Shown: piece by piece, positions 7,437 to 60,750 of the stretch | Layout of the letters: each line of letters starts with the position of its first letter | Numbering within the stretch: the stretch's first letter is position 1 | Origin: Octopus bimaculoides | Taxonomy: Eukaryota | Length of the DNA stretch: 64,000 nucleotides | Direction: 5' to 3' | Assembly: GCF_001194135.2 (NCBI RefSeq) | Contig: NC_068984.1 | Coordinates: 17,069,944 to 17,133,943, forward strand | Notes under the pieces: generated by a model | What the model saw: the letters and a program-made list of their open reading frames with translations, nothing else | What the model was told of the DNA's origin: nothing | Database searches by the model: none | Position numbers and translations under genes: made by a program

Positions 7437-7765
7437 TAGTTGTGCCAGGGGCACGTAAAAAGCACCATTCGAGCGTGGTCATTACCAGTGCTGCCTGGCT
7501 GGTTCCCATGCTGGTAGCACGTAAAAAACACCATTCAAGCGTGGTCAATGCCAGTACCACCTGACGGGCCCTCGTGCTGGTGGCATGTAAAAAAACACCC
7601 ATTACACTCTCAGAGTGGTTGGCATTAGGAAGGACATCCAGCTGTAGAAACTTTGCCAAATCGAGTCTGGTGTAGCCTTCTAGCTTCCCAACCCTCAGTC
7701 AAACTGTCCAAACCATGCCAGCATGGAAAGCGGACGTTAAACGATGATGATGATGCTGATGATGT
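7437..7765 (+). mobile_element. Family C copy filling most of the 439-bp intron 7347-7785
   Basis: Three gtaaaaagcacc modules then ggcattaggaaggacatccagctgtagaaa and (GAT)n tail. Confidence 0.8.
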
Positions 7766-9709: not shown

Positions 9710-10412
9710 CTATGAAATAAAACGAAAATACATAAATATATATATATACATATATATAATAATTAATTTGCATTATTCAAAGACAAATGTATCACTTTTA
9801 ACAATTATTTTGTCAAAATTTAAGACACCAAAGATTGAGAACATACTTAAACATTTTTTAGAGCAAATAATTATTAAAAGTTCATGTCTTTTGACAAAAT
9901 ATTTTTGAAATTGTGTATGTCTAAATGCATTTTGTGTCAAAATATTGAAATATTATTATATATATATATATTACAGCTTTGTTTTGATTTACTGCTGTAG
10001 AAAGGAAAATATTGCAAAGCTACAATTTTCTGACAAATTCCATTGGTTTGATCGTTATGTTAAAAAAACACTTAATCCAAACAATATTTGGAATTTGAAA
10101 ATTTTATCTAATTATACCTAAAAAAATTGCAGAAAACTGAAGCATATTTATTTGTATATTTCAAACATAATTAGTGTCATTATTGAATGGAACTTAATGG
10201 ATATGCCCAAGTTCTTGGCACATGGCATGAGAATCATTCAGATGGTTCAGTTAGTTATTTCTTAGTGGCTGCCAAACTAATGCCAATATGCAATTTATCT
10301 CAGTCTCACTATTCTGTGAAATTAAAACAACTATATATATATTATTTGGTAAATAGATTTTTTTTAAACGTTCATACTGTGTTGGTGCATTAGTAAAATA
10401 AATACCTCTTAC

Positions 10413-10610
10413 TTTTGCCTGAAGAACCTTTTCAAATGGTGCAGCAAATACTTTTATGATCATGTTTAAATCTCGAAGATACTGGTTCTCTTCAAGGATA
10501 AAATCTTTAACAATCTCTTCATAAGACAATGAATCTCGTCGAACTGGCTCTTCTTCAAGCATTAACGATGGGTTATCATCATCATCAGGAAAGAAAAGGT
10601 TCATGAGACC
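10413..10610 (-). CDS. Sos: SOS exon, histone-DH linker and DH start (GLMNLFF...YLRDLNMIIKVFAAPFEKVLQAK, phase 0/0)
   Basis: QYLRDLNMIIKVF matches SOS1 QYIRELNLIIKVF; tttatag|GGT, AAA|gtaaga; 198 nt. Confidence 0.95.
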
Positions 10611-15039: not shown

Positions 15040-15049
15040 NNNNNNNNNN
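15040..15049. other. Assembly gap (10 N)
   Basis: N run inside a family A SINE. Confidence 0.99.
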
Positions 15050-18643: not shown

Positions 18644-18928
18644 NNNNNNNNNNNNNNNNNNNNNNNNNNNNNNNNNNNNNNNNNNNNNNNNNNNNNNNNN
18701 NNNNNNNNNNNNNNNNNNNNNNNNNNNNNNNNNNNNNNNNNNNNNNNNNNNNNNNNNNNNNNNNNNNNNNNNNNNNNNNNNNNNNNNNNNNNNNNNNNNN
18801 NNNNNNNNNNNNNNNNNNNNNNNNNNNNNNNNNNNNNNNNNNNNNNNNNNNNNNNNNNNNNNNNNNNNNNNNNNNNNNNNNNNNNNNNNNNNNNNNNNNN
18901 NNNNNNNNNNNNNNNNNNNNNNNNNNNN
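18644..18928. other. Assembly gap (285 N) within a (TA)n tract
   Basis: N run flanked by (AT)n. Confidence 0.99.
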
Positions 18929-19967
18929 ATATATATATATATGCTTCTTTTAGTTTCCATCGACCAAATCCATTCACAAAGTTTTGGTTAGCTCAAGGTT
19001 ATAGAAGACACTTGCCCAAAATGCCATCCAGTGGGGCTGATCCCAAAACCACGTGGCTGGGAAGCAAACGTTTTGTCACTTCATGTAAAATATAACTCAA
19101 AAACATTTCCAGAAGGTAATCTTCTCGCACTTGGACAGAGAGAAAGCTCTCAGTCTAGGTAGACAACATTTGTAAATCTGGTGTAAACAATAAACAAACT
19201 TGTCCTCTTTTATTTTCAGCAATTCAAACAAATATAAAATGGAAAGGATTTTAACATGAGAAACCTGCTTCACTATATTTCCCATGATATTGTGACTGGG
19301 AATTAATGACTGTATACCCTTCCTATTGCCAACTAATATGACATCATAGCTGGTTATTTTAGATAAACCAAAACACCAACTATAATGAACATGTTTTTAT
19401 GCTAATATAACAGAATGTGTCCTGCCAATATGAAACAATAATCATTATACAAATGATAAGAAAAGGAAAGAAAATTTTAAAATGAGAAAATGGAAGAGAA
19501 ATAATGCTTTCTCCTTTCTACTATAGGCACAAGGCCTTAAATTTTGGAGAAGGGGGTTAATTGATTACATTGATCTCAGTACTTGGCTGATACTTGTATC
19601 TTGTTGGTGTTAATATCAGTTGCTGGCTATTTTGAATTCATAAAGGTCTTCTGAGGACAAATATGATGTAATGAACATGCAGATGAAGAGATGAAATACA
19701 TTGCTTAATAAATGAGTGTTGATATCAGGAAGCATATTTGAGGGAGATAATAATCAATGGTATATGTAATACAATATAAAGTTAACTTTTATAAAATGTT
19801 TATACCCAACTTTTGGATAGAGCTGAAAGTACTTTTAATTGAGGATACTGCTTCACTGTGCAATTAATTTTGTGCTTATTTGTGCAACAAGATAGAATAC
19901 AACCATTAAAAGATAAATGAATTGAATCTCTAAAAGACATATCTTGAGACTCAAGATTTAGAAATAT

Positions 19968-20367
19968 ATCATCATCATCATCGTTTAACGTCCGCTTTCC
20001 ATGCTAGCATGGGTTGGACGATTTGACTGAGGACTGGTGAAACCGGATGGCAACACCAGGCTCCAGTCTGATTTGGCAGAGTTTCTACAGCTGGATGCCC
20101 TTCCTAACGCCAACCACTCAGAGAGTGTAGTGGGTGCTTTTACGTGTCACCCGCACGAAAACGGCCACGCTCGAAATGGTGTCTTTTATGTGCCACCCGC
20201 ACAAGCCAGTCCAGGGGCACTGGCAACGATCTCGCTCGAAAATCCTACAGGAGCCAGTCAGGCGGTACTGGCAACGGCCACGCTCAAAATGGTGCATCTC
20301 ATGTGCCACCCGCACAAGAACCAGTCCAGGGGCACTGGCAACGATCTTACTTGGCTTGCCGGGTCTT
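19968..20367 (-). mobile_element. Young family C copy with internal tandem modules
   Basis: CpG-rich; long near-identical stretches shared with 56190-56505 and 59865-60175. Confidence 0.85.
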
Positions 20368-29175: not shown

Positions 29176-29753
29176 NNNNNNNNNNNNNNNNNNNNNNNNN
29201 NNNNNNNNNNNNNNNNNNNNNNNNNNNNNNNNNNNNNNNNNNNNNNNNNNNNNNNNNNNNNNNNNNNNNNNNNNNNNNNNNNNNNNNNNNNNNNNNNNNN
29301 NNNNNNNNNNNNNNNNNNNNNNNNNNNNNNNNNNNNNNNNNNNNNNNNNNNNNNNNNNNNNNNNNNNNNNNNNNNNNNNNNNNNNNNNNNNNNNNNNNNN
29401 NNNNNNNNNNNNNNNNNNNNNNNNNNNNNNNNNNNNNNNNNNNNNNNNNNNNNNNNNNNNNNNNNNNNNNNNNNNNNNNNNNNNNNNNNNNNNNNNNNNN
29501 NNNNNNNNNNNNNNNNNNNNNNNNNNNNNNNNNNNNNNNNNNNNNNNNNNNNNNNNNNNNNNNNNNNNNNNNNNNNNNNNNNNNNNNNNNNNNNNNNNNN
29601 NNNNNNNNNNNNNNNNNNNNNNNNNNNNNNNNNNNNNNNNNNNNNNNNNNNNNNNNNNNNNNNNNNNNNNNNNNNNNNNNNNNNNNNNNNNNNNNNNNNN
29701 NNNNNNNNNNNNNNNNNNNNNNNNNNNNNNNNNNNNNNNNNNNNNNNNNNNNN
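29176..29753. other. Assembly gap (578 N)
   Basis: N run. Confidence 0.99.
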
Positions 29754-33860: not shown

Positions 33861-34959
33861 TGGGTTCAAATCACACAAGTGTCAGTTTTTCCTTTCATCT
33901 CTTCAAGATCACCAAGTACCAATAATACAATGTTATTAATTTGACTGACTATACATTTGCTTATACAAAATGAGATCTTGTGCCAAGTCAAAGGAAATAT
34001 ACTGTATTTAAATAGTTTTAGAAGCAATACGAAGGATTTCTGTCAGCAAAACTGGCGATTTCATCTTTGATGTAATTGCTGTGAATTGCAAAAAATTTGT
34101 GAATTTCAATATTTTATTATATTTTGTTCAGTGACTTTCTTTCAAAAAGAAAAAAAAAATATCCAGTAAAATGAGGTAGAATTAGCTTGAATGTTACAAC
34201 ATTATAGAGGATATCTGATTAAACAAGTAGTTACATGAAAGTAAAGCTCACTGCTTTTGTTTTCAATGGAAACAAACATTAATTCTATATGTTGTAATTT
34301 AGATGGTATACAACATTACATCAATATCTTGTTTAGGAAATCATAACATTTACTAAATTTGAAACCTGTGTTTATGTTCACTTTTGTAAGCATTATATGG
34401 AAGGAACATCATTTTGATGTGATCTCTGTGAGAATTATTTCTCGGTTACTGCCTAAAATAAAGTGTTTGGTAAAATTATAATTTTTCATACTACACATCT
34501 AAAAAGTGTCTGCTATTTTGCATATGTTCTCTATAATGATTTCTATTATAAGCACAAGATTTCTATCATAAGCCCAAGGAGTATAGCCAATTTAACAGAC
34601 TCCAGTACTTGACTGCTACTTTATGTTATTGACCCCAGCCATATCTGAACTCAGAACATATAGTTGTCCCTAGTATTAAACCTCTCCAAGATTAATGGCA
34701 AGATAAAAATAGACCCAGGCAGCTGGCTGTAAATATATCAGATATTACCTTTTACTGGTTTCATTCACGGGACTGCAGCCATGCTGGGACATAGCCTAAC
34801 CCCAGTAATTTTTTTAAAGTTTGTTACTAATTCTGTTAGTCTCTTTTACTGAACTGTTAATGTATGAAGACAAACAAAGCAACACTAATTGTCAAGAGAG
34901 GGTTTGGTTGGACTCAGATTAATCAGATAATGTGAGCCTGAACAAGCTAGGTTTCTGTT

Positions 34960-36605
34960 AGAAGCCTGTGAAACCTTAAATTGCGGTGTGGATTATGGTC
35001 TAGTTACCTGTATTGTAAATCAGGTGGTTCATGAAGGAGTCATACCCAATGACTCATGTAACAGCACCACAGTCAACTGCTACAAAGGTAAAGGTGACAC
35101 CTTAGATAGAAATAATTACAGAGATATCAAATTGTTGGATCAAGTGATGAAAGTTAGGGAGAGGCTCATAGCCCAACTAATTAGGGAGTGAGTTAATCTA
35201 GATGAGATGCAGTTTGATTTTGTGCCAAGGAGAAGCACCATTGATGCTATATTTCTGGTAAGGTAGCAGCAGTGAAAGATTAACCACTGTACTTGGCTTT
35301 TGTTGATTGAGAGAAAGCCTTTGACAGGGTCCCCCAATCCCTTATCTGGTGGTCAATGCAGAAACTAGGGATGGACGAGTGGTTGGTGAGGTGTACAAGC
35401 CATGTACAGGGGCTCTGTCAGTAAAGTGAGGGTTGGCAACAAGTACAGCAAAGAATTAAGGGTATGAGCAGGGTTCACCAAGGATTGGTCCTCAACCTCC
35501 TCTTGTTCATGATAGTTGTTGTGAGAATGCAATGAACTGTGTGTATGCATGTTTATGTTGTTTGAAGATCAAGGGAACCTGTGCATACATAGACAATATT
35601 ACCATCTGTGGTACCAATCGCACAGAACATGACAAGAATCTATCAATTACTTTAGAACAACATAAGCATGCATACACACAATTCATTGCATTCTCACAAC
35701 AATAGCCATCCAGGAAATAACAGTGGAATTTAAGACAGGCTGCCTTGACGGTTCCTCTGTGTTCATGACCTTGTTCTTATAGCTGAACCACTACCAGAAC
35801 TCAAGAAGAAGTTTCAGGTATGGAAGCAAGGTCTAGAATTTGAGTTAACCTAGCAAAAACCAAAGTCTTAGTAAGTAGGAAGGGAGACAAATCACAAATC
35901 CCTTCAGGTAGATGGCCCTACTCAATCTGTAGGAAAGGCATAGGTAGAAACTTCATAAGATATACCTGGTGTAAACTATGGACACATAAGAGGTGCAGCA
36001 ATATCAGAGGAAGATTAACAGGGAAAATAACGTTCGTATGTGGAAGATGCACAGATACAATAAACACCTAAAATGTACAGAAAATAGATTCCATCAACTG
36101 CCAGGAGGGTAAGCTAGAGGTAGTAGATAGTTTCTATTATCTAGGTGACCAAGTTAATAGCGGAGGTGGATGCTCCAAGAGCATAGCAGTGAGTATAAGA
36201 ATAGACCTTTGGCAATATGCTGTACTTGAGAAGACATGTGAAGCCAAGTAAAATTGTAGTTATGGCTGATGTTGGTGTCACCTAAAAAGCACCTTCTGCC
36301 AGTGGCCATTGAAAAGCTCCTTTCGAGTGTTGGGCTTCACAGAGGCAATGACGAATGTCCAAGACCTTTAGCATTATGTTGTGCTTGAGAAGAAGACTCA
36401 TCAAGCCAAGTCAAATCGTAGTTGGAGCCGATACTGGTGCCACACAAATCACACCCATGCTTGTGGCACATAAAGCATTCACTACACTCTCAGAGCGGTT
36501 GGCATTAGGAAGGGTATTCAGATGTAGAAACCATATCAAATCAGACCTAGTCAAACCGTCTGACCCATGCTAGCATGGACAACAGACGTTAAATTATGAT
36601 GATGA
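34960..36605 (+). mobile_element. 5'-truncated, internally deleted RTE LINE (RT pseudogene plus family C tail)
   Basis: KGKGDTLDRNNYRDIKLL, EMQFDFVPRRSTIDAIF, EKAFDRVP, KTKVL, LEVVDSFYYLG with stops and frameshifts; jump to 3' UTR near 36205. Confidence 0.9.
35517..35701. mobile_element. 185-bp TG...CA insertion with 46-bp inverted arms and a Gypsy RT fragment
   Basis: Arms 35517-35562 and 35656-35701 (2 mismatches); flanks atagt/atagc; spacer reads KIKGTCAYIDNITICGTNRTEHDKNL. Confidence 0.85.
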
Positions 36606-37457
36606 TCTCACACACACACACACACACACACAATGAGCTTCTACAGCTTCTGCCAACCAATTTCACTCACAAAGCATGGAGTGGTATGTGCCTATAGCAG
36701 AAAACACTGGCCCAAAGTGCAGCACAGTAGGACTGCATCTGAAACCACATGGTTGCAAAGTGAGCTTCTTAATCAAAAGCAATACATGTTAATAAAATAG
36801 AAAAGGAATACAAAATGTGAAAATCTTCATATGAACAAAGACTGTTAAAGTGAGTGATGTTTCTGGTTGGTTTATAATGTATAGGAATAAATAAGAAATG
36901 GAGACGGGGATATAAACTATTTTTTTTGTTTTAAATCCCAAATAATGTAGCCAGTGAAAAGTGAATGATTACATTTAAGTTTTATAGACCACAAATGCAT
37001 TCTTTTCAATGAACTGTTGAATATTTTGAAAATTATTTCCTTGAGTGATTAGTTATATAAAAAAAGATTTGTTTCATAAAAAGATCATTACAAATAGAAA
37101 TCTATGAGAAGTCCCAATGTCACTTTAACCCTTGGACATTCAAATTACTGTTGAATATAATGCATATTTATTAACACTGTTTTGAATTAATCATGCATTA
37201 CTTTGCAGCTTTCAGATTTCAATGATGTAATTTATTTTTCTAGGATTACAATTTATTTTGCAAGGATTCCAACGTCAAGGCTGTTCTTCTTTACAGGTCA
37301 GAAACTTGAAACATCATCAAAGTCATAAAGAGTAAGCTACAGACCCTCGCCAACAAAATGTCTGCACTACATCCTCAAGATCTGGTGACAGGATAAAATT
37401 TCAAACAGAAAGTCTGTGGGATAGAATGAATCAAACTCCTATCAATCAAGAAATTCT

Positions 37458-38624: not shown

Positions 38625-39415
38625 ACTTTGTTTCTATGGTTTCTAAAAGATTGAGATCACAATATTTCCTCTGAACAGGACACCGGTTCAACACAGGGTT
38701 ACTCATTTACAGCTAAGTGGACTGGGGCAATGTGTAATGAAGTATTTTGCTCAAGAGCACAATGCACTGCACAGTCCAGGAGTCAAAACGATGATCTTGT
38801 GATTGTGAATGCAACATCTGAACCACTAGGCCACATGCCTTCACTAGCATAAAACAGATATGACTGAAAATGGAAATGAAGATACAGTTTGCAATTTCAA
38901 CCATTCCAAGGACAATTAAAAAAAATTTTTTAAATGCAATTCTGAAATTATGTTTGTCTAAAAATTGAAATAAAAATGGAAATTGTAGTTGTGGCTGATG
39001 CCAGTCCGCTTGACTGGCGCCTGTGCTGGTGGCACGTAATAAGCACCATTCACGCGTGGGTTGATGCCAGTGCTACCCAAGTGGCTCCTTGTGCTGGTGG
39101 CCTGTAAAAAGCACCATCTAAATGTTGTCAATGTCAGTACCCCGCAACTGGCTCCTGTGTGGGTAGCACATAAAAAGCACTATCCAAACGTGGTCGATGC
39201 CAGTGCCGCCTGACTGGCTCCCATGCTGGTGGCACGTAAAAAGCACCTACTACACTCTCGGAGTGGCTGGCGTTAGGAAGGGCATCCAGCTGTAGAAACA
39301 TTGCCAGATCAGATTGGAGCCTGGTGCAGCCTACTGGCTTGCTAGTTCTCAGTCAAACTGTCCAACCCACGCCAGCATGGAAAATGGATGTTAAACGATG
39401 ATGATGATTATGATG
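38625..39415. mobile_element. SINE family F (-) about 38625-38830 and family C (+) about 38985-39415 with five modules
   Basis: Family motifs; repeated gctggtggcacgtaaaaagcacc. Confidence 0.75.
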
Positions 39416-44003: not shown

Positions 44004-44138
44004 TGTATTACATGAGTAATCTAAAAACGTGTTCTCATTTTGAAAATCTCTACCTGATTGGTAAAGAGTTCAATAAAAACTCACTGAACTCGTTGATAGA
44101 GCACAGGCGTATTTACTATAAAATATCAAATAACTGAC

Positions 44139-44396
44139 CTTGATGAGGAGATTGTGTACCTTCTCCACTGGCAAAACCAACGTGTTCTTTTTGCCTTTCT
44201 CGAGGGCACCTTGTGCCTCTCGTATCGTCCATACATTAATTGATGTGGGGATGATTTTTTGTACACGTTCCTCCACATCTTGGATGGTATGTAATGGCAC
44301 TGCACACAATGTGAAAAGGAGCTGGAGACAAAGCTTTTCGATGTACTCCAATGCTTCATCTCGTGTTGTTAGATTGGTAATTACTTGGCGTTGAAC
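44139..44396 (-). CDS. Sos: SOS exon, first histone fold (VQRQVITNL...PVEKVHNLLIK, 86 aa, phase 0/0)
   Basis: Matches SOS1 VQGQVHPTL...DVEERVQK...LPVEKIHPLLK; acceptor ttttttccag|G, donor AAG|gtcagt; 258 nt. Confidence 0.96.
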
Positions 44397-44813
44397 CTGG
44401 AAAAAAAAAGACAAACAAACAATTTTAAAATCAAGAGCAAAGATTTATTATTCACAAGGAACATATTCAGTATAGTCTTTTTTTTAATATCATCACATGG
44501 CATGTAATTTTTTTACTTTCCTACCATTTTCATAGAATAGAATACTTTGGGTTTATTTATTCATTTATTGATTGTTATAATGTATTGGATGAAAGTTCAA
44601 ATCCAGTCGAAGTTTAGTCTTCTGAATAGAATTTATGAAAAGGATTTTTCTGCATCTCACCCCTATCGTCTGTATTAATGATGTAAAGCGTAGAGCAAAA
44701 GTTCAAATCTACTTAAAGTATTCTATCTTACAGTTGGCAGAAGGGGTGTATTTAGATATCTTCATTTCTCATTAATACAACTTCTGGACAATCATATTTT
44801 AAATAAATATACA

Positions 44814-46030: not shown

Positions 46031-48820
46031 ATTTCTTTGCCATGAGGAAGAGGAGAAATATGATTTAGGCAGGATCCTCAAATTTAGATAACTATTCTAT
46101 TAAGCATTACCATAGACTAACAAGAGTAAAAGATTACAGACAAATGTATTCATGTAAATGCATTGCTTAATTATTTTGGTAATGTCTTTTCTTGCATGAC
46201 TTTAGGACAAATATTCTTTTGTTTTCTAATATCTATTTGCTTCTTTTATTTTTCCATATTTGTTCTATGATTATAAATGGCATGAAGTATGCAGACTTGT
46301 GAGAATCAACTACAGAGGTGAAGTTTATAGCTGTAAAGGCAAAACCAAATGGAGCTCCGGACACAGGCCATTATAATACAGTCAACTTACTCAGTAGGAC
46401 AGGAAGACAAAGAACTTAAAACTACAACATTGAACAAATCAGTATGATGAAACCCCAGAGAAAAGCAGTCAGATAGGTGACAGAAAACAAGGACACCTGT
46501 TTGTTGTTTTAGTCTGGTGTCAGACCTGTGATCAAAATCATTCTACTTAACCAGGCACAATGCACCTAAGACTGCGTCACTCAAGACGTCTTCTTCTCAC
46601 AACATACTAAAATATTATTTGAAGTAGATTTGGTTGCTATGTCTAGCATTTTGAGCAACCACATAGAGGCTCCTTTGTTGGTTTATGAAATGGCATGCTT
46701 AACAGAGCAATTACATAAAAAAAAAATAATAAAAGAGATAGATGCTGAATGTGGAAACATGAATGTTCTGCATGTTACTAATAACCCATATTGAATAAAT
46801 CTATAAAAAATATTTTCTTAGAGGATGTAGAGCCCATAACCTGATAAAAAAGGTTTTGTAAAATATTGATAGTTAATGTTTTATTGGATCAAATTAGTAA
46901 CTGAGAAAAACAGAAAAACTGGACAGAGGAATTTAAAAGCAGCACAAAATGCATGCATGTGTGTGTGTGTGTGTCCGTCAATTTATATCAGTGTGCTTTG
47001 TGTTTGGCCCTGAAAGAGAGACAGTGGATTCAGCATGCCAAAGAAAGATGAGAAATATATGGCTTTGGTAACAAAAGAAGGACAAATGCAATAGCAAGTA
47101 ATGTTGAATGAATAATGTATAAAGCAGCAGGATTAAATGACTAAATGTTTGAAGACAGGAAGGAAAATGAATAATATGATGGGCCAAAGAGCAGATAGAG
47201 GTTGTCTACGAGGAAGGATTCTTTAATAAAAGAGACAGATTTTTCTTGATTGCTAGAAGCCAGTATAGACATAAATTCATACAAAATTATTAAAATCTAC
47301 AGGCAGAGAGATAACTGATATTAATTAAGAACAGAATTAAATGAGAGTGCTAGAAATGTGTTTTAAATTATTTATGCATTATTGTAGGATATTTATGAGC
47401 AACAGAACAGGGAGAAGTAAAACAAGCTACCAGTTCTTCAAACTAGATTTTTAATAAGTCTAAAACAAATCAGTATAATCTACACCTCAATAAATTGATT
47501 AATTTAAATAGATCTTAATATGAGAATTTAATTGTTTTTAATCAATTAGTCACAAAATAGTGAATCTTTTCAAATGCTGCCGTAATTTCAGAGGGAAAAT
47601 CTGAGAGCAGATAAAGTTTTATAAGGGCCCAGTTTATGGAAAATTGATTTTCATTTCTGAATTTATTAGAACATTTTAAATATATAATTCTTATCTACTT
47701 AAGTCAAATATAACCAGTGAATTCAGATAACTAATTTGGAATTTTAAGATAGTCTACATAAGAAATTGTAAGAGAAATAAACCATAGAAGTGAAATGAAG
47801 TAGCCGTGATTTGGTTATTAAAACTACTCTCCTTTGTGCCCAGTACTTCATTTGTTTATCCAAAAAAAAAAAAGCAAGATAAAATAACATGTCTACAATA
47901 ATCTTGCAAATAAATAAATGAAATGAAAAAAAAACCCACTTCTCACTGACTACAATTGTCAAGAGATCAAATGGTTAAAGAATGTTTGTCTGTCTGTCGG
48001 GTAATCTCCTTCCCTCTCTTTCTCTTTCTCTCTCACACACACATACACACACAATAGTCCACAGACAGATTATAAACAATTACTACAATCATTAGGGAAA
48101 AGTAGCCAATGGTTAGCTAAGAGGTAACATTTAAGAGCTATCTGTCAGCTAGTTAAGATTCCTTTAGAAAGAGCATTCCGATCATAGTTAAAATATCAGA
48201 TTAGATAAGCCACACAGATGAAAGAAAGGGAGGAGAAGAAAAAAAAAAAGCAAAACTCCAAGGACAAACTTCGATTTTGTGGAACAAAACAACTGACTGT
48301 TACTCTGCATTCAACAAATACTTTCAAGGAAATAAATATATGGAGCGAGAGCGGGTGATTTTTAATGCCAACATAATACTTTTTATGAGTCAACATAGTA
48401 TTATGTCCTTTGTTTGTGAGAATATGTCAAGACAAATATTTGTACCAAGCAGTAAAAAATTCAAGATCCCACATGTTGTTAGGTCACACGATAGGTCATA
48501 GTGAACTGCTTATTAGAGACTCGAATATTTTGTGGGCGAGGTCGTTGTAAATTACTAATTCAAATTCTGAACATGTTCTTTTTAAATTGTATTATCAACC
48601 AATTCAATTATCTTAAATTGTGATTTAATATTTCCTTCAAATTAAAAAATAAAAATAAACCACCTATGTATACTTCCTTTTTTTCTTTTTTTTCTTCTTC
48701 ATAAATAAATGAACTATCAAAAGAAAATGCGCACATAACTAGGGAACCAATCCTATGCAGACAGAACAATATATGTAATATCTTGTATTATATGAAAACT
48801 AATGAATGGAGTCAACGTGT

Positions 48821-56008: not shown

Positions 56009-56505
56009 GTGTCCACCCTGTCTTGACATCATGTGAATGCATTGCAAATGAATTACATTCAATTCCAATATTCTGTAAAAACATGTTTGGGCATGGGGCA
56101 ATATTACCTTGCTTGGAAACAAGTAAGGGCTGGTAAAAGGAAAGGCATCCATTTGTAGAAAATCTGCCTCAATAAATCTGACCCATACAAGCATGGAGAG
56201 GATTTTCGAGCGAGATCGTTGCCAGTGCCCCTGGACTGGCTCTTGTGCGGGTGGCACATAAAATACACCATTTTGAGCATGGCCGTTGCCAGTACCGCCT
56301 GACTGGCCTTCGTGCAGGTGACACATAAAAGCACCCACTACACTCTCGGAGTGGTTGGCATTAGGAAGAGCATCCAGCTGTAAAAACTCTGCCAAATCAG
56401 ATTGGAGCCTGGTGTAGTCATCTGGTTTCACCAGTCCTCAGTCAAATCGTCCAACCCATGCTAGCATGGAAAGCGGACGTTAAACGATAATGATGATGAT
56501 GATGA
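55965..56505 (+). mobile_element. Older SINE with a young family C copy (about 56190-56505) appended
   Basis: (TG)n body; CpG-rich modules matching 19968-20367 in reverse. Confidence 0.8.
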
Positions 56506-58985: not shown

Positions 58986-59864
58986 ATTTACAAAGAAATG
59001 ACTGACAATGATTTAGAAGTTTAGGTTTACTTGCCATCAATCACTCACTCTCTCTCTCTCTCTCTCTCTCATATCTTACTTGTTTTCAGTTATTAGACGT
59101 AAGAGTTTTAGTTGAACAAATTCACCTCAGTACTTATTTTTTGTTGCAAGTCGGGCACTTATGCTATCAGTTTCTTTTGCTGAACTGCTAAGTTACAGTA
59201 ATACAAAGACATAACATCATTTAACATCCATTTTAAATGATGATAATAATGATGGATGTGTGTGTGTGTGTGTGTGTGTGTGTACACACTCATACTCAAT
59301 GAACTTCCACCCTGACTACAATCAACAATTTTTATGTTCAAAACTTAAAGTATCTCCTATTAGTTTACCACTTCAGTACATTCCTTAAATTACATGTCCT
59401 GCCCACTGCTGATAACTGCAATGTCAGCTAGATATCCACTACATGGTTTCAAAATATCCTGTTATATATGCATGCCATCCTAGACTTCATTAAGCAGCCA
59501 TTTACCTAATCAACAAAAAAGGTTGTGATATATTTTCTGAGATTACTCTAAAGGTTTCTGCCCACAATTTGTTACTTGTAATAACTCATACTTGTGTCAC
59601 TGCATCTAACTTTCAGGAAACCCCTTCTAATCACACTATATATACAGCTTCCAAACTCTATGTTAACTATATAAGCCTTCTGTTGTATCTTGGGAGGGTC
59701 ATTATGCCAACACTACACCAGAACATACAAGTTCACATCAAGAATCTTGCAAACCAAATAAAAAACGAAACGTAAATCTTATCTTATAGAAAATCTCTTC
59801 CTTGAAGAAGAGAATCATTGTCTAAAACCACTTGCTAGTTTTAAAAACAGAATTAATAAGGGTT

Positions 59865-60175
59865 CATCATCGTTTAACATCCGCTTTCCATGCTAGTATG
59901 GGTTGGACGATTTGAATGAGGACTGGCGAATCGGATGGCTGATCTGACACAGTTTCTACAGCTGGATACCCTTCCTAACACCAACCACTCCAAGAGTGTA
60001 GTGGGTGCTTTTACGTGCCACCAGCACGAGGGCCAGTCAGGCGGTACTGGCAATGGCCATGCTCAAAATGGTGTTTTTTACGTGCCACCTGCACAGGAGC
60101 CAGTCCAGCGGCACTGGCAACAATCTCGCTCAAATGTTTTCTAACATGCCACCGGCACAAGTGCCAGTAAGGCGA
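59865..60175 (-). mobile_element. Family C copy
   Basis: (CAT)n gtttaacatccgctttccatgc and modules. Confidence 0.85.
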
Positions 60176-60750
60176 CATTTTGCTAATACAAAATCTAAGT
60201 GAAGATAAAACTTAGCGGTTTTTATGAGGACATTTTGCAAGCTTTCAATATGATTGACATTCATGGGGGTGATTTTGGTTTAAATTATTGCACAAGTAAA
60301 TATGTGATATGTTGATGAACTGGTGCAAAGTGAAAACAGTAGTCTATTTGTTAGATGTATAATAAAATGCAAGAACAAAAATAAGCAGGATACACACACA
60401 CACACAAAGATGTTAAGAAACAAACACAGTCATGTGCTTTGTACCTCAACTTCTGATGACTGCTAAAGTACTTGCATAACACAACCTGGTGGATTTTAGA
60501 ACTGCAAAAATCCTTTTTTCATCAAGATAACTAAACCTAACCTTTATTAGTTGGATTTAGCAATCCTAATAAAGGATGGAACTGGCTTTATGGCAACACA
60601 TAATGAACCCCAGTGAGTTATCAAGAAGAAAGTAAATACCTCATGCTTCCACATTCAATCCAAGTTCATTAAAAGTTAATCAGTGACAAAGTCATAGACA
60701 ATCCCTTTCTATAATAAGTTTAACTCTACTTCCAGTATTCAGCTCTTTAA

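What the first reader, a model, noticed from the sequence alone, without database searches (positions are those of the whole stretch)
35517..35701. Miniature element with LTR-style ends, MITE-style arms and a captured Gypsy RT active-site motif
Seen: starts TGTTG, ends CAACA, has 46-bp inverted arms, and a 5-bp near-duplication (atagt/atagc) whose removal restores the host RTE sequence. The 93-bp spacer is an open frame resembling Ty3/Gypsy RT around YxDD (AYIDNITICG...EHDKNL). Established: TG...CA ends with 4-6 bp TSDs are the integrase signature, but LTRs are direct repeats rather than long inverted arms. Inference: an integrase-mobilised foldback derivative of a Gypsy element (two copies of one LTR end around an internal fragment), possibly an undescribed non-autonomous class. 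A transcript would be a hairpin able to seed small RNAs against the parent.
Basis: partly seen in the sequence, partly recalled or inferred. Interest (0 to 1): 0.7.

Follow-up and report, generated by a model that had tools for sequence, protein, structure and literature searches.

The report
Palindromic mini-insertion derived from a Gypsy retrotransposon
A 185-base insertion in an octopus-type genome carries a real piece of a Ty3/Gypsy reverse-transcriptase gene between two inverted copies of what looks like one LTR end, and was probably pasted in by the retrotransposon's own integrase; it is an unusual by-product or derivative of an LTR element, seen here only as a single copy.

Summary
Window 35517-35701 is a 185-bp unit. 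It has 46-nt inverted arms (2 mismatches), TGTTG...CAACA ends and a 93-bp spacer, and ATAGT/ATAGC flank it. It sits inside a decayed RTE reverse-transcriptase gene. Octopus vulgaris RTE relatives read ATAGTC (Val) at that point.

The RT claim also holds, though the standard searches (Pfam, phmmer, PDB) missed it because the match is only about 28 residues. A degenerate DNA pattern back-translated from the spacer peptide (51 bits) hit at least 120 metagenome contigs. It also hit 4 "MAG" contigs in a 596-Gb prokaryote genome collection. Every hit is the YxD[DN] box of one clade of compact Ty3/Gypsy elements (PR-RT-RNaseH-IN, about 4 kb). The spacer also matches this clade at positions the pattern left free: 3 of 125,320 windows score as well.

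Elements of this clade make 5-bp duplications. Their LTRs start TG[T/A][T/G]GTG, and one starts exactly TGTTGTG and ends CAACA.

Best reading: a Gypsy-derived palindromic mini-element inserted by integrase, perhaps a snap-back reverse-transcription product. Whether it is a one-off or a mobilised family could not be tested, because the host genome is not in any searchable collection. Ginger-type MITEs (TGTNR ends, 4-bp duplications) are a described kind and remain the main rival.

The parts
35512..35516 (.). Left copy of the target-site duplication (ATAGT). This is RTE sequence: the GT belongs to the Val codon GTC of the RTE RT.
   Evidence: Sequence. RTE relatives have Val/GTC here.
35517..35562 (+). 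Left arm, 46 nt, beginning TGTTGTGAGAATG. Candidate LTR terminus (att end).
   Evidence: Inverted repeat I1. Unique in the window. The first 7 nt are identical to the LTR start of clade member L007, and the clade consensus is TG[T/A][T/G]GTG.
35563..35655 (+). Spacer: a sense-strand fragment of a Ty3/Gypsy RT gene spanning the YxD[DN] box (..KGTCAYIDNITICGTNRTEHDKNLSITL..). Homology runs from about 35565 to about 35657, so it fills the whole spacer.
   Evidence: The pattern scan gave at least 120 metagenome hits, all RT. The prokaryote-genome control gave only the same RT family. Pfam shows PR-RVT_1-RNaseH-IN in the relatives, with the motif inside RVT_1. tblastn of 12 pol proteins hit only this spot in 64 kb. 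Free-position score test. 87% identity over 30 nt at the DNA level.
35656..35701 (-). Right arm, the inverted copy of the left arm (44/46 identical), ending CTCACAACA.
35702..35706 (.). Right copy of the target-site duplication (ATAGC). It differs from the left copy by one T>C change.
   Evidence: Sequence. The in-frame empty site is restored when 35517-35706 is removed.
34983..36204 (+). Host of the insertion: a decayed RTE-type non-LTR retrotransposon copy (RT domain) with stops and frameshifts. The element interrupts it between RT motifs.
   Evidence: Six-frame translation. RVT_1 at E = 1.4e-12. 55-58% identity to RTE RTs, including one from Octopus vulgaris. 77-78% nucleotide identity to O. 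vulgaris RTE copies, with the alignment breaking at 35516.

Best explanation
The element is a dead, non-coding mini-derivative of a Ty3/Gypsy LTR retrotransposon. It consists of 93 bp of that element's RT gene between two inverted copies of a 46-bp segment that is most likely one LTR end.

Because both ends carry the same TG...CA terminus, a duplex of this kind offers two equivalent integrase (att) ends. The retrotransposon's integrase joined it into an old RTE copy with a 5-bp staggered cut. That gives ATAGT on both sides, and one copy later mutated to ATAGC.

My preferred route to such a molecule is inferred, not shown. It is an aberrant reverse-transcription product: strong-stop DNA that starts at the LTR end makes a wrong jump into the pol RNA, copies about 93 nt, and then folds back and copies its own first 46 nt. 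Such a product has no PBS, PPT or direct LTRs, so it cannot be retrotransposed again. By this route it would be a one-off or low-copy by-product.

Today it has no evident function. It lies in an intron of a SOS-like gene, and if transcribed it would form a 46-bp hairpin.

What is shown: the inverted repeat, the ends, the duplication, the RT origin of the spacer, and the 5-bp duplications and similar LTR termini in the RT's clade. What is inferred: the LTR origin of the arms, the action of integrase, and the snap-back route.
For: - Structure and uniqueness.
- The empty site is restored in frame and matches RTE relatives at protein and DNA level.
- The spacer is Gypsy RT. The 51-bit pattern derived from it finds at least 120 metagenome contigs and 4 MAG contigs, all with the same RT context.
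- The relatives have the PR-RVT_1-RNaseH-H2C2-rve order, with the motif inside RVT_1.
- The spacer is the only tblastn hit in the window.
- At positions not fixed by the pattern, only 3 of 125,320 windows score as well.
- Clade members are LTR elements with TG..CA ends and 5-bp duplications: L043 GGAGT, L051 AAATG, L024 GTTCG/CGAAC depending on strand.
- LTR 5' ends in the clade are TGTTGTG (L007, which also ends CAACA), TGATGTG, TGTGGTG and TGACGTG, against the arm's TGTTGTG.
- RT homology fills the spacer up to both arms, with no other filler.
- Ty3-like elements are reported as recently active in O. vulgaris (PMC13282606).
Against: - Only one copy was seen, and the parent element was not found. 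No Gypsy sequence other than the spacer is in the window or in 21 kb of O. vulgaris.
- The arm-to-LTR link rests on 7-8 terminal nucleotides compared across phyla.
- The duplication can also be read as a perfect 4-bp ATAG. The inverted repeat extends one base further (T...A). Both fit a 4-bp-duplicating transposase equally well.
- No comparable inverted LTR-end mini-element was found in 0.81 Mb of contigs rich in this clade.
- I found no literature precedent for integrated snap-back products.
- The snap-back route needs two low-homology template switches.
Confidence: 0.5

Rival explanations
1. It is an ordinary non-autonomous cut-and-paste DNA transposon (MITE), most likely of the integrase-related Ginger2/TDD or Ginger1 kind. 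Its internal region was replaced by 93 bp of filler copied from a Gypsy RT during gap repair. It would be moved by a Ginger-type transposase with a 4-bp (ATAG) duplication.
For: - TGTNR terminus, 46-47 bp TIRs, small size, and a perfect 4-bp repeat ATAG.
- Ginger1 and Ginger2 are defined by TGTNR ends, 40-270 bp TIRs and 4-bp (TDD: 5-bp) duplications (PMC2836005).
- Ginger2 MITEs starting TGTTACGG are described in insects (PMC3845634).
- Ginger transposase signatures occur in molluscs (PMC10294476).
Against: - The duplicated site is neither the TATA/RTATAY of Ginger2 nor the CCGG/CCGT of Ginger1.
- The filler would have to come, by coincidence, from the element class that shares the TG..CA ends and the 5-bp duplication. 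LTR elements are a small fraction of octopus repeats.
- The terminal 7 nt fit the LTR ends of the RT's own clade.
- RT sequence fills the spacer completely.
Confidence: 0.2
2. It is one member of a multi-copy family of Gypsy-derived TIR elements that a Gypsy or Ginger-like integrase excises and re-inserts repeatedly. That would be an undescribed non-autonomous class linking LTR retrotransposons and Ginger DNA transposons.
For: All the evidence for Gypsy derivation applies. Bao et al. proposed that Ginger1 TIRs arose from two LTRs in opposite orientation (PMC2836005). The two arms differ at 2 of 46 positions, which is also compatible with descent from a diverged family.
Against: - There is one copy in 64 kb and none in 21 kb of O. 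vulgaris.
- There were no hits in the metagenome, prokaryote-genome or viral collections, although none of these holds the host genome.
- To my knowledge, excision by an LTR-element integrase has never been shown.
Confidence: 0.2
3. It is not a transposition at all. A double-strand break in the RTE copy was repaired with captured retrotransposon cDNA that had folded back on itself. The TG..CA ends and the short flanking repeat are then incidental (microhomology or fill-in of overhangs).
For: From my own knowledge, capture of retrotransposon cDNA at breaks is established in yeast. The element is single-copy here.
Against: Three integrase hallmarks would have to coincide by chance: exact TG...CA ends, symmetric 46-bp ends, and a 4-5 bp direct repeat of target sequence with a clean in-frame empty site.
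Confidence: 0.07
4. It is a hairpin RNA gene (microRNA or endo-siRNA precursor) selected for its structure.
For: A very stable 46-bp stem, z = -10.7.
Against: There is no Rfam match at E <= 1. The 93-nt loop is protein-coding debris. It sits inside a dead RTE within an intron, and no conservation data exist.
Confidence: 0.03

Closest known systems
Compact Ty3/Gypsy LTR retrotransposons with the RT box ..GT(F/Y)AY(L/M)D(D/N)(V/I)T(I/V)(C/T)G....EHDxNL.. (metagenome loci L007, L014, L024, L043, L051 and others)
   Same: The spacer is 17/28 identical at the amino-acid level and 87% identical over 30 nt. Shared features are TG..CA ends, 5-bp duplications, and LTR starts of TG[T/A][T/G]GTG including TGTTGTG.
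   Different: These elements are about 4.0-4.2 kb with 120-260 bp direct LTRs and a full PR-RT-RNaseH-IN frame. The window element is 185 bp, its repeats are inverted, and it has no room for a PBS or PPT.
Ginger2/TDD and Ginger1 DNA transposons and their MITEs, e.g. Ginger2_NA of Bombyx and Rhodnius (PMC2836005, PMC3845634)
   Same: TGTNR termini, TIRs of tens of bp, 4-5 bp duplications, an integrase-type DDE enzyme as the mover, and a miniature non-coding form.
   Different: Ginger elements carry no RT sequence. Their targets are TATA/RTATAY or CCGG, and the site here is ATAG(T). No Ginger transposase partner could be looked for.
TRIM / LARD / SMART non-autonomous LTR retrotransposons (e.g. 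TRIMs in bivalves, PMC6934838)
   Same: Small non-coding derivatives of LTR elements that depend on a parent's enzymes, with TG..CA ends and 5-bp duplications.
   Different: They keep direct terminal repeats plus a PBS and PPT, and they are copied through RNA. This element has inverted ends and none of those signals.
Self-primed (snap-back) minus-strand strong-stop DNA in retroviral reverse transcription (from my own knowledge of the HIV-1 literature; not retrieved here)
   Same: It predicts a DNA whose two ends are inverted copies of the LTR end next to the primer-binding site.
   Different: It is known as an in vitro or abortive product. I could not find a described case of one integrated in a genome with an internal pol fragment.
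Foldback (FB) elements and DIRS-like retroelements with inverted terminal repeats
   Same: Inverted termini. DIRS elements also carry an RT related to Gypsy RTs.
   Different: FB arms are long arrays of subrepeats. DIRS elements use a tyrosine recombinase and make no duplication, whereas the spacer's RT clade carries an rve integrase.

Membership tests
Ty3/Gypsy LTR retrotransposon derivative | Internal sequence homologous to a Ty3/Gypsy pol gene | tested here: met
   The spacer matches the RVT_1 YxD[DN] box of a PR-RT-RNaseH-IN clade.
Ty3/Gypsy LTR retrotransposon derivative | 5'-TG...CA-3' termini and a 4-6 bp target-site duplication | tested here: met
   The ends are TGTTG...CAACA, flanked by ATAGT/ATAGC (4 of 5 positions match; ATAG is perfect). 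Clade relatives make 5-bp duplications.
Ty3/Gypsy LTR retrotransposon derivative | Long terminal repeats in direct orientation | tested here: not met
   The only repeats are inverted 46-47 nt arms; no direct repeat longer than 15 nt was found.
Ty3/Gypsy LTR retrotransposon derivative | PBS next to the 5' repeat and PPT next to the 3' repeat | tested here: not met
   RT-coding homology fills the spacer to within about 2 nt of both arms, leaving no room for either signal.
Ty3/Gypsy LTR retrotransposon derivative | Arms identical to an LTR end of a Gypsy element in the same genome | not testable with these tools
   The host genome is not in any searchable collection. Only the terminal 7-8 nt could be compared with relatives from other organisms.
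MITE (non-autonomous TIR DNA transposon) | Terminal inverted repeats, small size, no coding capacity, flanking duplication | tested here: met
MITE (non-autonomous TIR DNA transposon) | Many homogeneous copies with different duplications | not testable with these tools
   There is one copy in 64 kb and none in 21 kb of O. vulgaris, and exact-match scans of the metagenome, prokaryote-genome and viral collections were empty.
Ginger1 / Ginger2-TDD | TGTNR termini and 40-270 bp TIRs | tested here: met
   The terminus is TGTTG and the TIRs are 46-47 bp. Definition taken from PMC2836005.
Ginger1 / Ginger2-TDD | Characteristic target: 4-bp CCGG/CCGT (Ginger1), or 4-bp TATA within RTATAY (metazoan Ginger2) | tested here: not met
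   The duplicated site is ATAG or ATAGT within GATAGT.
Ginger1 / Ginger2-TDD | Autonomous partner with the same TIRs encoding a Ginger transposase | not testable with these tools
   No integrase or transposase homolog is in the window, and the host genome is unavailable.
DIRS-like retroelement | Tyrosine recombinase and no target duplication | tested here: not met
   The RT clade carries Integrase_H2C2 plus rve, and a duplication is present.
Known structured RNA (Rfam) | Match to a curated covariance model | tested here: not met
   No match at E <= 1 in 34800-36900.

The most novel reading that the evidence does not exclude
Cephalopod genomes hold a family of short TIR elements built from one Gypsy LTR end in inverted duplicate around a pol remnant, and an integrase-type enzyme excises and re-inserts them. 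This would be a living intermediate between LTR retrotransposons and Ginger DNA transposons, the transition that Bao et al. (2010) proposed but could not document.
Probability: 0.15. Interest if true: 0.8.

Novelty: new variant of a known kind. Interest (0 to 1): 0.55.

Why it matters
Integrase-related DNA transposons (Ginger) are thought to share ancestry with Gypsy LTR elements, but no structural intermediate is known. Here Gypsy coding sequence sits between inverted LTR-like TG..CA ends, and the unit was inserted with an integrase-style duplication.

That leaves two readings. It may be a fossil of an abortive reverse-transcription product that an integrase still accepted, which would show that two identical att ends are enough in vivo. 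Or it may be a member of such an intermediate family. Either reading can be tested directly once the host genome is searched.

Practically, it also shows that a 25-30 residue gene fragment invisible to Pfam, phmmer and PDB searches can be placed securely with a back-translated pattern scan.

Tried and rejected
Searches that failed because the match is too short:
- Pfam hmmscan of the 61-aa and 33-aa peptides gave nothing at E <= 10.
- The word-index protein search found no candidate.
- Exhaustive phmmer over 1.84 billion representatives returned only a repetitive bacterial surface protein, P0005. I judged this spurious from its repeated weak 'NLSITL' matches and its MBG / Listeria-Bacteroides repeat domains.
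- PDB phmmer at E <= 10 returned no RT.
- These negatives reflect the 24-28 residue length of the match, not absence of homology.

Searches for more copies:
- Exact scans for the arm 25-mer found 0 in the metagenome, prokaryote-genome and viral collections.
- The two ORFs inside the element are not on record as called genes.
- The arm sequence is not in any searchable paper.

Other leads that went nowhere:
- Rfam gave no match.
- Searching with a SOS-like exon to identify the species and fetch an orthologous empty site returned only 62%-identical TARA plankton contigs. Species identity therefore rests on repeats shared with O. vulgaris.
- A scan of 0.81 Mb of Gypsy-rich contigs for other inverted LTR-end mini-elements found only an unrelated 139-bp inverted repeat in L088.
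- An 11-mer identical to the element's end at 46594-46604 has no LTR-like context.

Readings considered and rejected:
- Autointegration would put the TG/CA termini next to pol sequence, not facing outward.
- A 2-LTR-circle junction would have the termini facing inward.
- A TA (Tc1/mariner) or 3-bp TAG duplication cannot be excluded from one copy. Both require the same extra assumption, a pre-insertion T>C change in the RTE, and they lose the symmetric TG..CA ends.

Handling of relatives: I printed only termini and the RT box of the Gypsy relatives, not whole elements. Temporary files copied from the fetched contigs were deleted.

Full report
**1. What is in the sequence**

Window 35517-35701 reads TGTTGTGAGAATG...CATTCTCACAACA. 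The repeat finder gives one strong inverted repeat, 35516-35562 against 35656-35702. It is 47 nt long, 96% complementary, and has 93 nt between the arms. Counted from the TG...CA ends, the arms are 46 nt and differ at two positions, both transitions.

The arm occurs nowhere else in the 64-kb window, and none is expected by chance. The unit folds as a hairpin of -86.9 kcal/mol, z = -10.7 against shuffles.

**2. The insertion site**

The element interrupts the RT domain of a decayed RTE-type non-LTR retrotransposon on the + strand. The evidence for the host is:
- typical RTE motifs in the six-frame translation;
- RVT_1 at E = 1.4e-12;
- 55-58% identity to RTE proteins, one from Octopus vulgaris.

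The flanks are ...CATGATAGT | element | ATAGCCATCC... Cutting out 190 bp restores LLLFMIVIQEITVEFKTGC in frame. Relatives read LLFIIVLQAITEEFKTGC. A 21-kb O. vulgaris locus contains an RTE copy that aligns up to window base 35516 at 77.6% identity, and it reads ATCATAGTCCTCCAGG at the site. The ancestral target was therefore most likely ATAGTC.

The simplest reading is a 5-bp duplication, ATAGT, whose right copy later changed to ATAGC. A perfect 4-bp ATAG with a pre-existing T>C change in this RTE copy costs the same single substitution, so one copy cannot decide between the two.

**3. Source organism and genomic context**

The window shares many repeat families with O. vulgaris. One SINE-like unit matches at up to 90% over 291 bp, and G+C is 35%. 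The source is an octopod or a close relative.

The element lies between two minus-strand exons of a SOS-like Ras/Rho-GEF gene, so it is intronic.

**4. Is the spacer really RT?**

Standard searches said no:
- Pfam gave nothing.
- The word-index protein search gave nothing.
- Exhaustive phmmer gave only a spurious bacterial repeat protein.
- PDB gave no RT.

These failures reflect length, because the candidate match is under 30 residues. An open frame is also weak evidence: a minus-strand frame is open too, and about 5% of 61-codon windows here lack stops.

I therefore back-translated a relaxed form of the peptide, Y-x-D-[DN]-x-T-x-x-G-x4-E-H-D-x-N-L, into a degenerate DNA pattern carrying 51 bits. 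For about 10^12 bases I estimate roughly 10^-3 chance hits. The results were:
- In the window it matches once, with 0 in shuffles.
- As a control, in 596 Gb of prokaryote genomes it hit 4 contigs, all from MAGs.
- Every hit, including those four, has the same context..PFGvTNgvacFQR....nlkGTfaY(L/M)D(D/N)vT(I/V)(C/T)G....EHDxNL.rF... I take the four MAG contigs to be eukaryote contamination.

Long frames through the motif contain aspartyl protease, RVT_1, RNase H, Integrase_H2C2 and rve, in the Ty3/Gypsy order. The motif lies in the YxDD box of RVT_1.

Because the loci were selected with the pattern, I scored only the positions the pattern left free. The spacer has K, G, T, A before the Tyr, the Cys of TICG and the Leu at +22, each among the commonest residues in the family. 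Only 3 of 125,320 six-frame windows of the 64 kb reach its score.

Further points:
- tblastn of twelve full pol proteins against the window hits only 35568-35642, at up to 68% over 25 aa.
- At the DNA level, 30 nt are 87% identical to several relatives.
- Homology fills the spacer to within about 2 nt of each arm.
- YxDN is a normal variant in this clade, present in 27% of distinct members, so it is not a broken active site.

The spacer is a fragment of a Ty3/Gypsy RT gene.

**5. Are the arms an LTR end?**

This could be tested only indirectly. Eighteen clade members in the metagenome contigs have recognisable LTRs. These elements span about 4.0-4.2 kb with LTRs of about 90-260 bp, and a G-rich polypurine tract precedes the 3' LTR in many of them.

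Three elements with clean borders show 5-bp duplications: L043 GGAGT, L051 AAATG, and L024 GTTCG/CGAAC depending on strand.

Their LTR 5' ends are TGTTGTGC (L007, whose LTR also ends ..CTACAACA), TGATGTG[A/G], TGTGGTG and TGACGTG. The arm starts TGTTGTGA. An exact 7-nt match to one of about 15 distinct termini has a chance of roughly 0.015-0.03 by my estimate. That is suggestive, not proof.

Together with the RT fragment and the 5-bp duplication, it makes a single Gypsy parent the most economical source of both parts.

**6. Mechanism**

A duplex with the same TG...CA terminus at both ends gives an integrase two equivalent att ends. Concerted joining would produce the observed duplication.

The element has no direct LTRs and no room for a PBS or PPT. 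It therefore cannot be copied by the normal retrotransposition route.

I see two ways it could exist.

(a) A one-off aberrant reverse-transcription product. Strong-stop DNA begins at the LTR end, makes a wrong first jump into pol RNA, copies about 93 nt, then folds back and copies its own first 46 nt. Read on the window's minus strand, the order is arm, antisense RT, inverted arm. That is what minus-strand synthesis would give. However, the symmetry of the arms means the plus-strand version fits equally well.

(b) A family excised and re-inserted by an integrase-type transposase, as Ginger elements are.

I favour (a), because excision by an LTR-element integrase is not known. No analogous mini-elements turned up in 0.81 Mb of contigs rich in this clade. 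I also found no precedent in the literature.

**7. Comparison with known kinds**

That is not so:
- Ginger1 and Ginger2/TDD transposons have TGTNR ends, 40-270 bp TIRs and 4-bp duplications (5 bp in TDD). They encode Gypsy-like integrases (PMC2836005).
- Ginger2 MITEs beginning TGTTACGG are described (PMC3845634).
- Ginger signatures exist in molluscs (PMC10294476).

The element fails the Ginger target preference: its site is ATAG(T), not TATA or CCGG. It also carries RT sequence, which no Ginger element does. A Ginger-type MITE with captured filler nevertheless remains the main rival.

It also fails two defining features of LTR elements and their TRIM/LARD derivatives: direct repeats and PBS/PPT signals. 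I therefore file it as a new variant of a Gypsy derivative with inverted ends, not as a member of either family.

**8. Limits**

Copy number, the parent element, an orthologous empty site and small RNAs could not be examined. No searchable collection holds the host genome. These are the decisive tests, and they are simple to run on the assembly.

Noticed in passing
window 44070-44414 (-) and 10251-10604 (-): Two exon-like ORFs belong to a SOS-like Ras/Rho-GEF gene on the minus strand: an N-terminal histone-fold-like segment and the start of the RhoGEF/DH domain. Relatives on TARA contigs are followed by RhoGEF and RasGEF ORFs. The studied element therefore lies in an intron of more than 30 kb. 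No near-identical protein was found in the 5.8-billion-protein collection (best 62-65%).
   Followed up: partly
window about 36450-36780, and about 20 further copies (e.g. 56205-56495, 59864-60177, 19966-20323, 38974-39408, 7440-7755): An abundant SINE-like repeat, often next to (CA)n. It matches Octopus vulgaris locus L005 at up to 90% over 291 bp. It accounts for several of the long spurious ORFs (MKPD..TRLQSDLAEFLQLDALPNANHSE...).
   Followed up: partly
window 15040-15049, 18644-18928, 29176-29753: Three runs of N (10, 285 and 578 bases), i.e. assembly gaps. The second is flanked by (TA)n microsatellite.
   Followed up: no
protein P0001: A 194-aa 'RNA-directed DNA polymerase, partial [Escherichia coli]' on a 586-bp contig is the closest relative (57%) of the window's RTE. 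It is evidently an animal (octopus-type) RTE fragment mislabelled through contamination.
   Followed up: no
loci L126-L129 (MAGs labelled bacterium Ust_3, Rubritalea sp., Ekhidna sp.): Contigs binned into bacterial MAGs carry the eukaryotic Ty3/Gypsy RT family. They are probably host (eukaryote) contamination of the bins.
   Followed up: partly
loci L007, L014, L024, L043, L051, L076 and others: The Gypsy clade related to the spacer is unusually compact: about 4.0-4.2 kb including about 90-260 bp LTRs. Many members have the sequence after the 5' LTR starting ATTTAAT.../ACTTATT... rather than a TGG-type primer-binding site.
   Followed up: no
L088 2017-2155: A 139-bp inverted-repeat unit with 46-nt arms (93%) and TGCTAG...CTAGCA ends, on a eukaryote-derived metagenome contig. 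It is unrelated in sequence to the window element and single-copy among the loci.
   Followed up: partly
window 46594-46604: TTCTCACAACA is identical to the last 11 nt of the element. There is no similarity beyond it, no LTR-like partner and no repeat context, so it is probably chance.
   Followed up: yes
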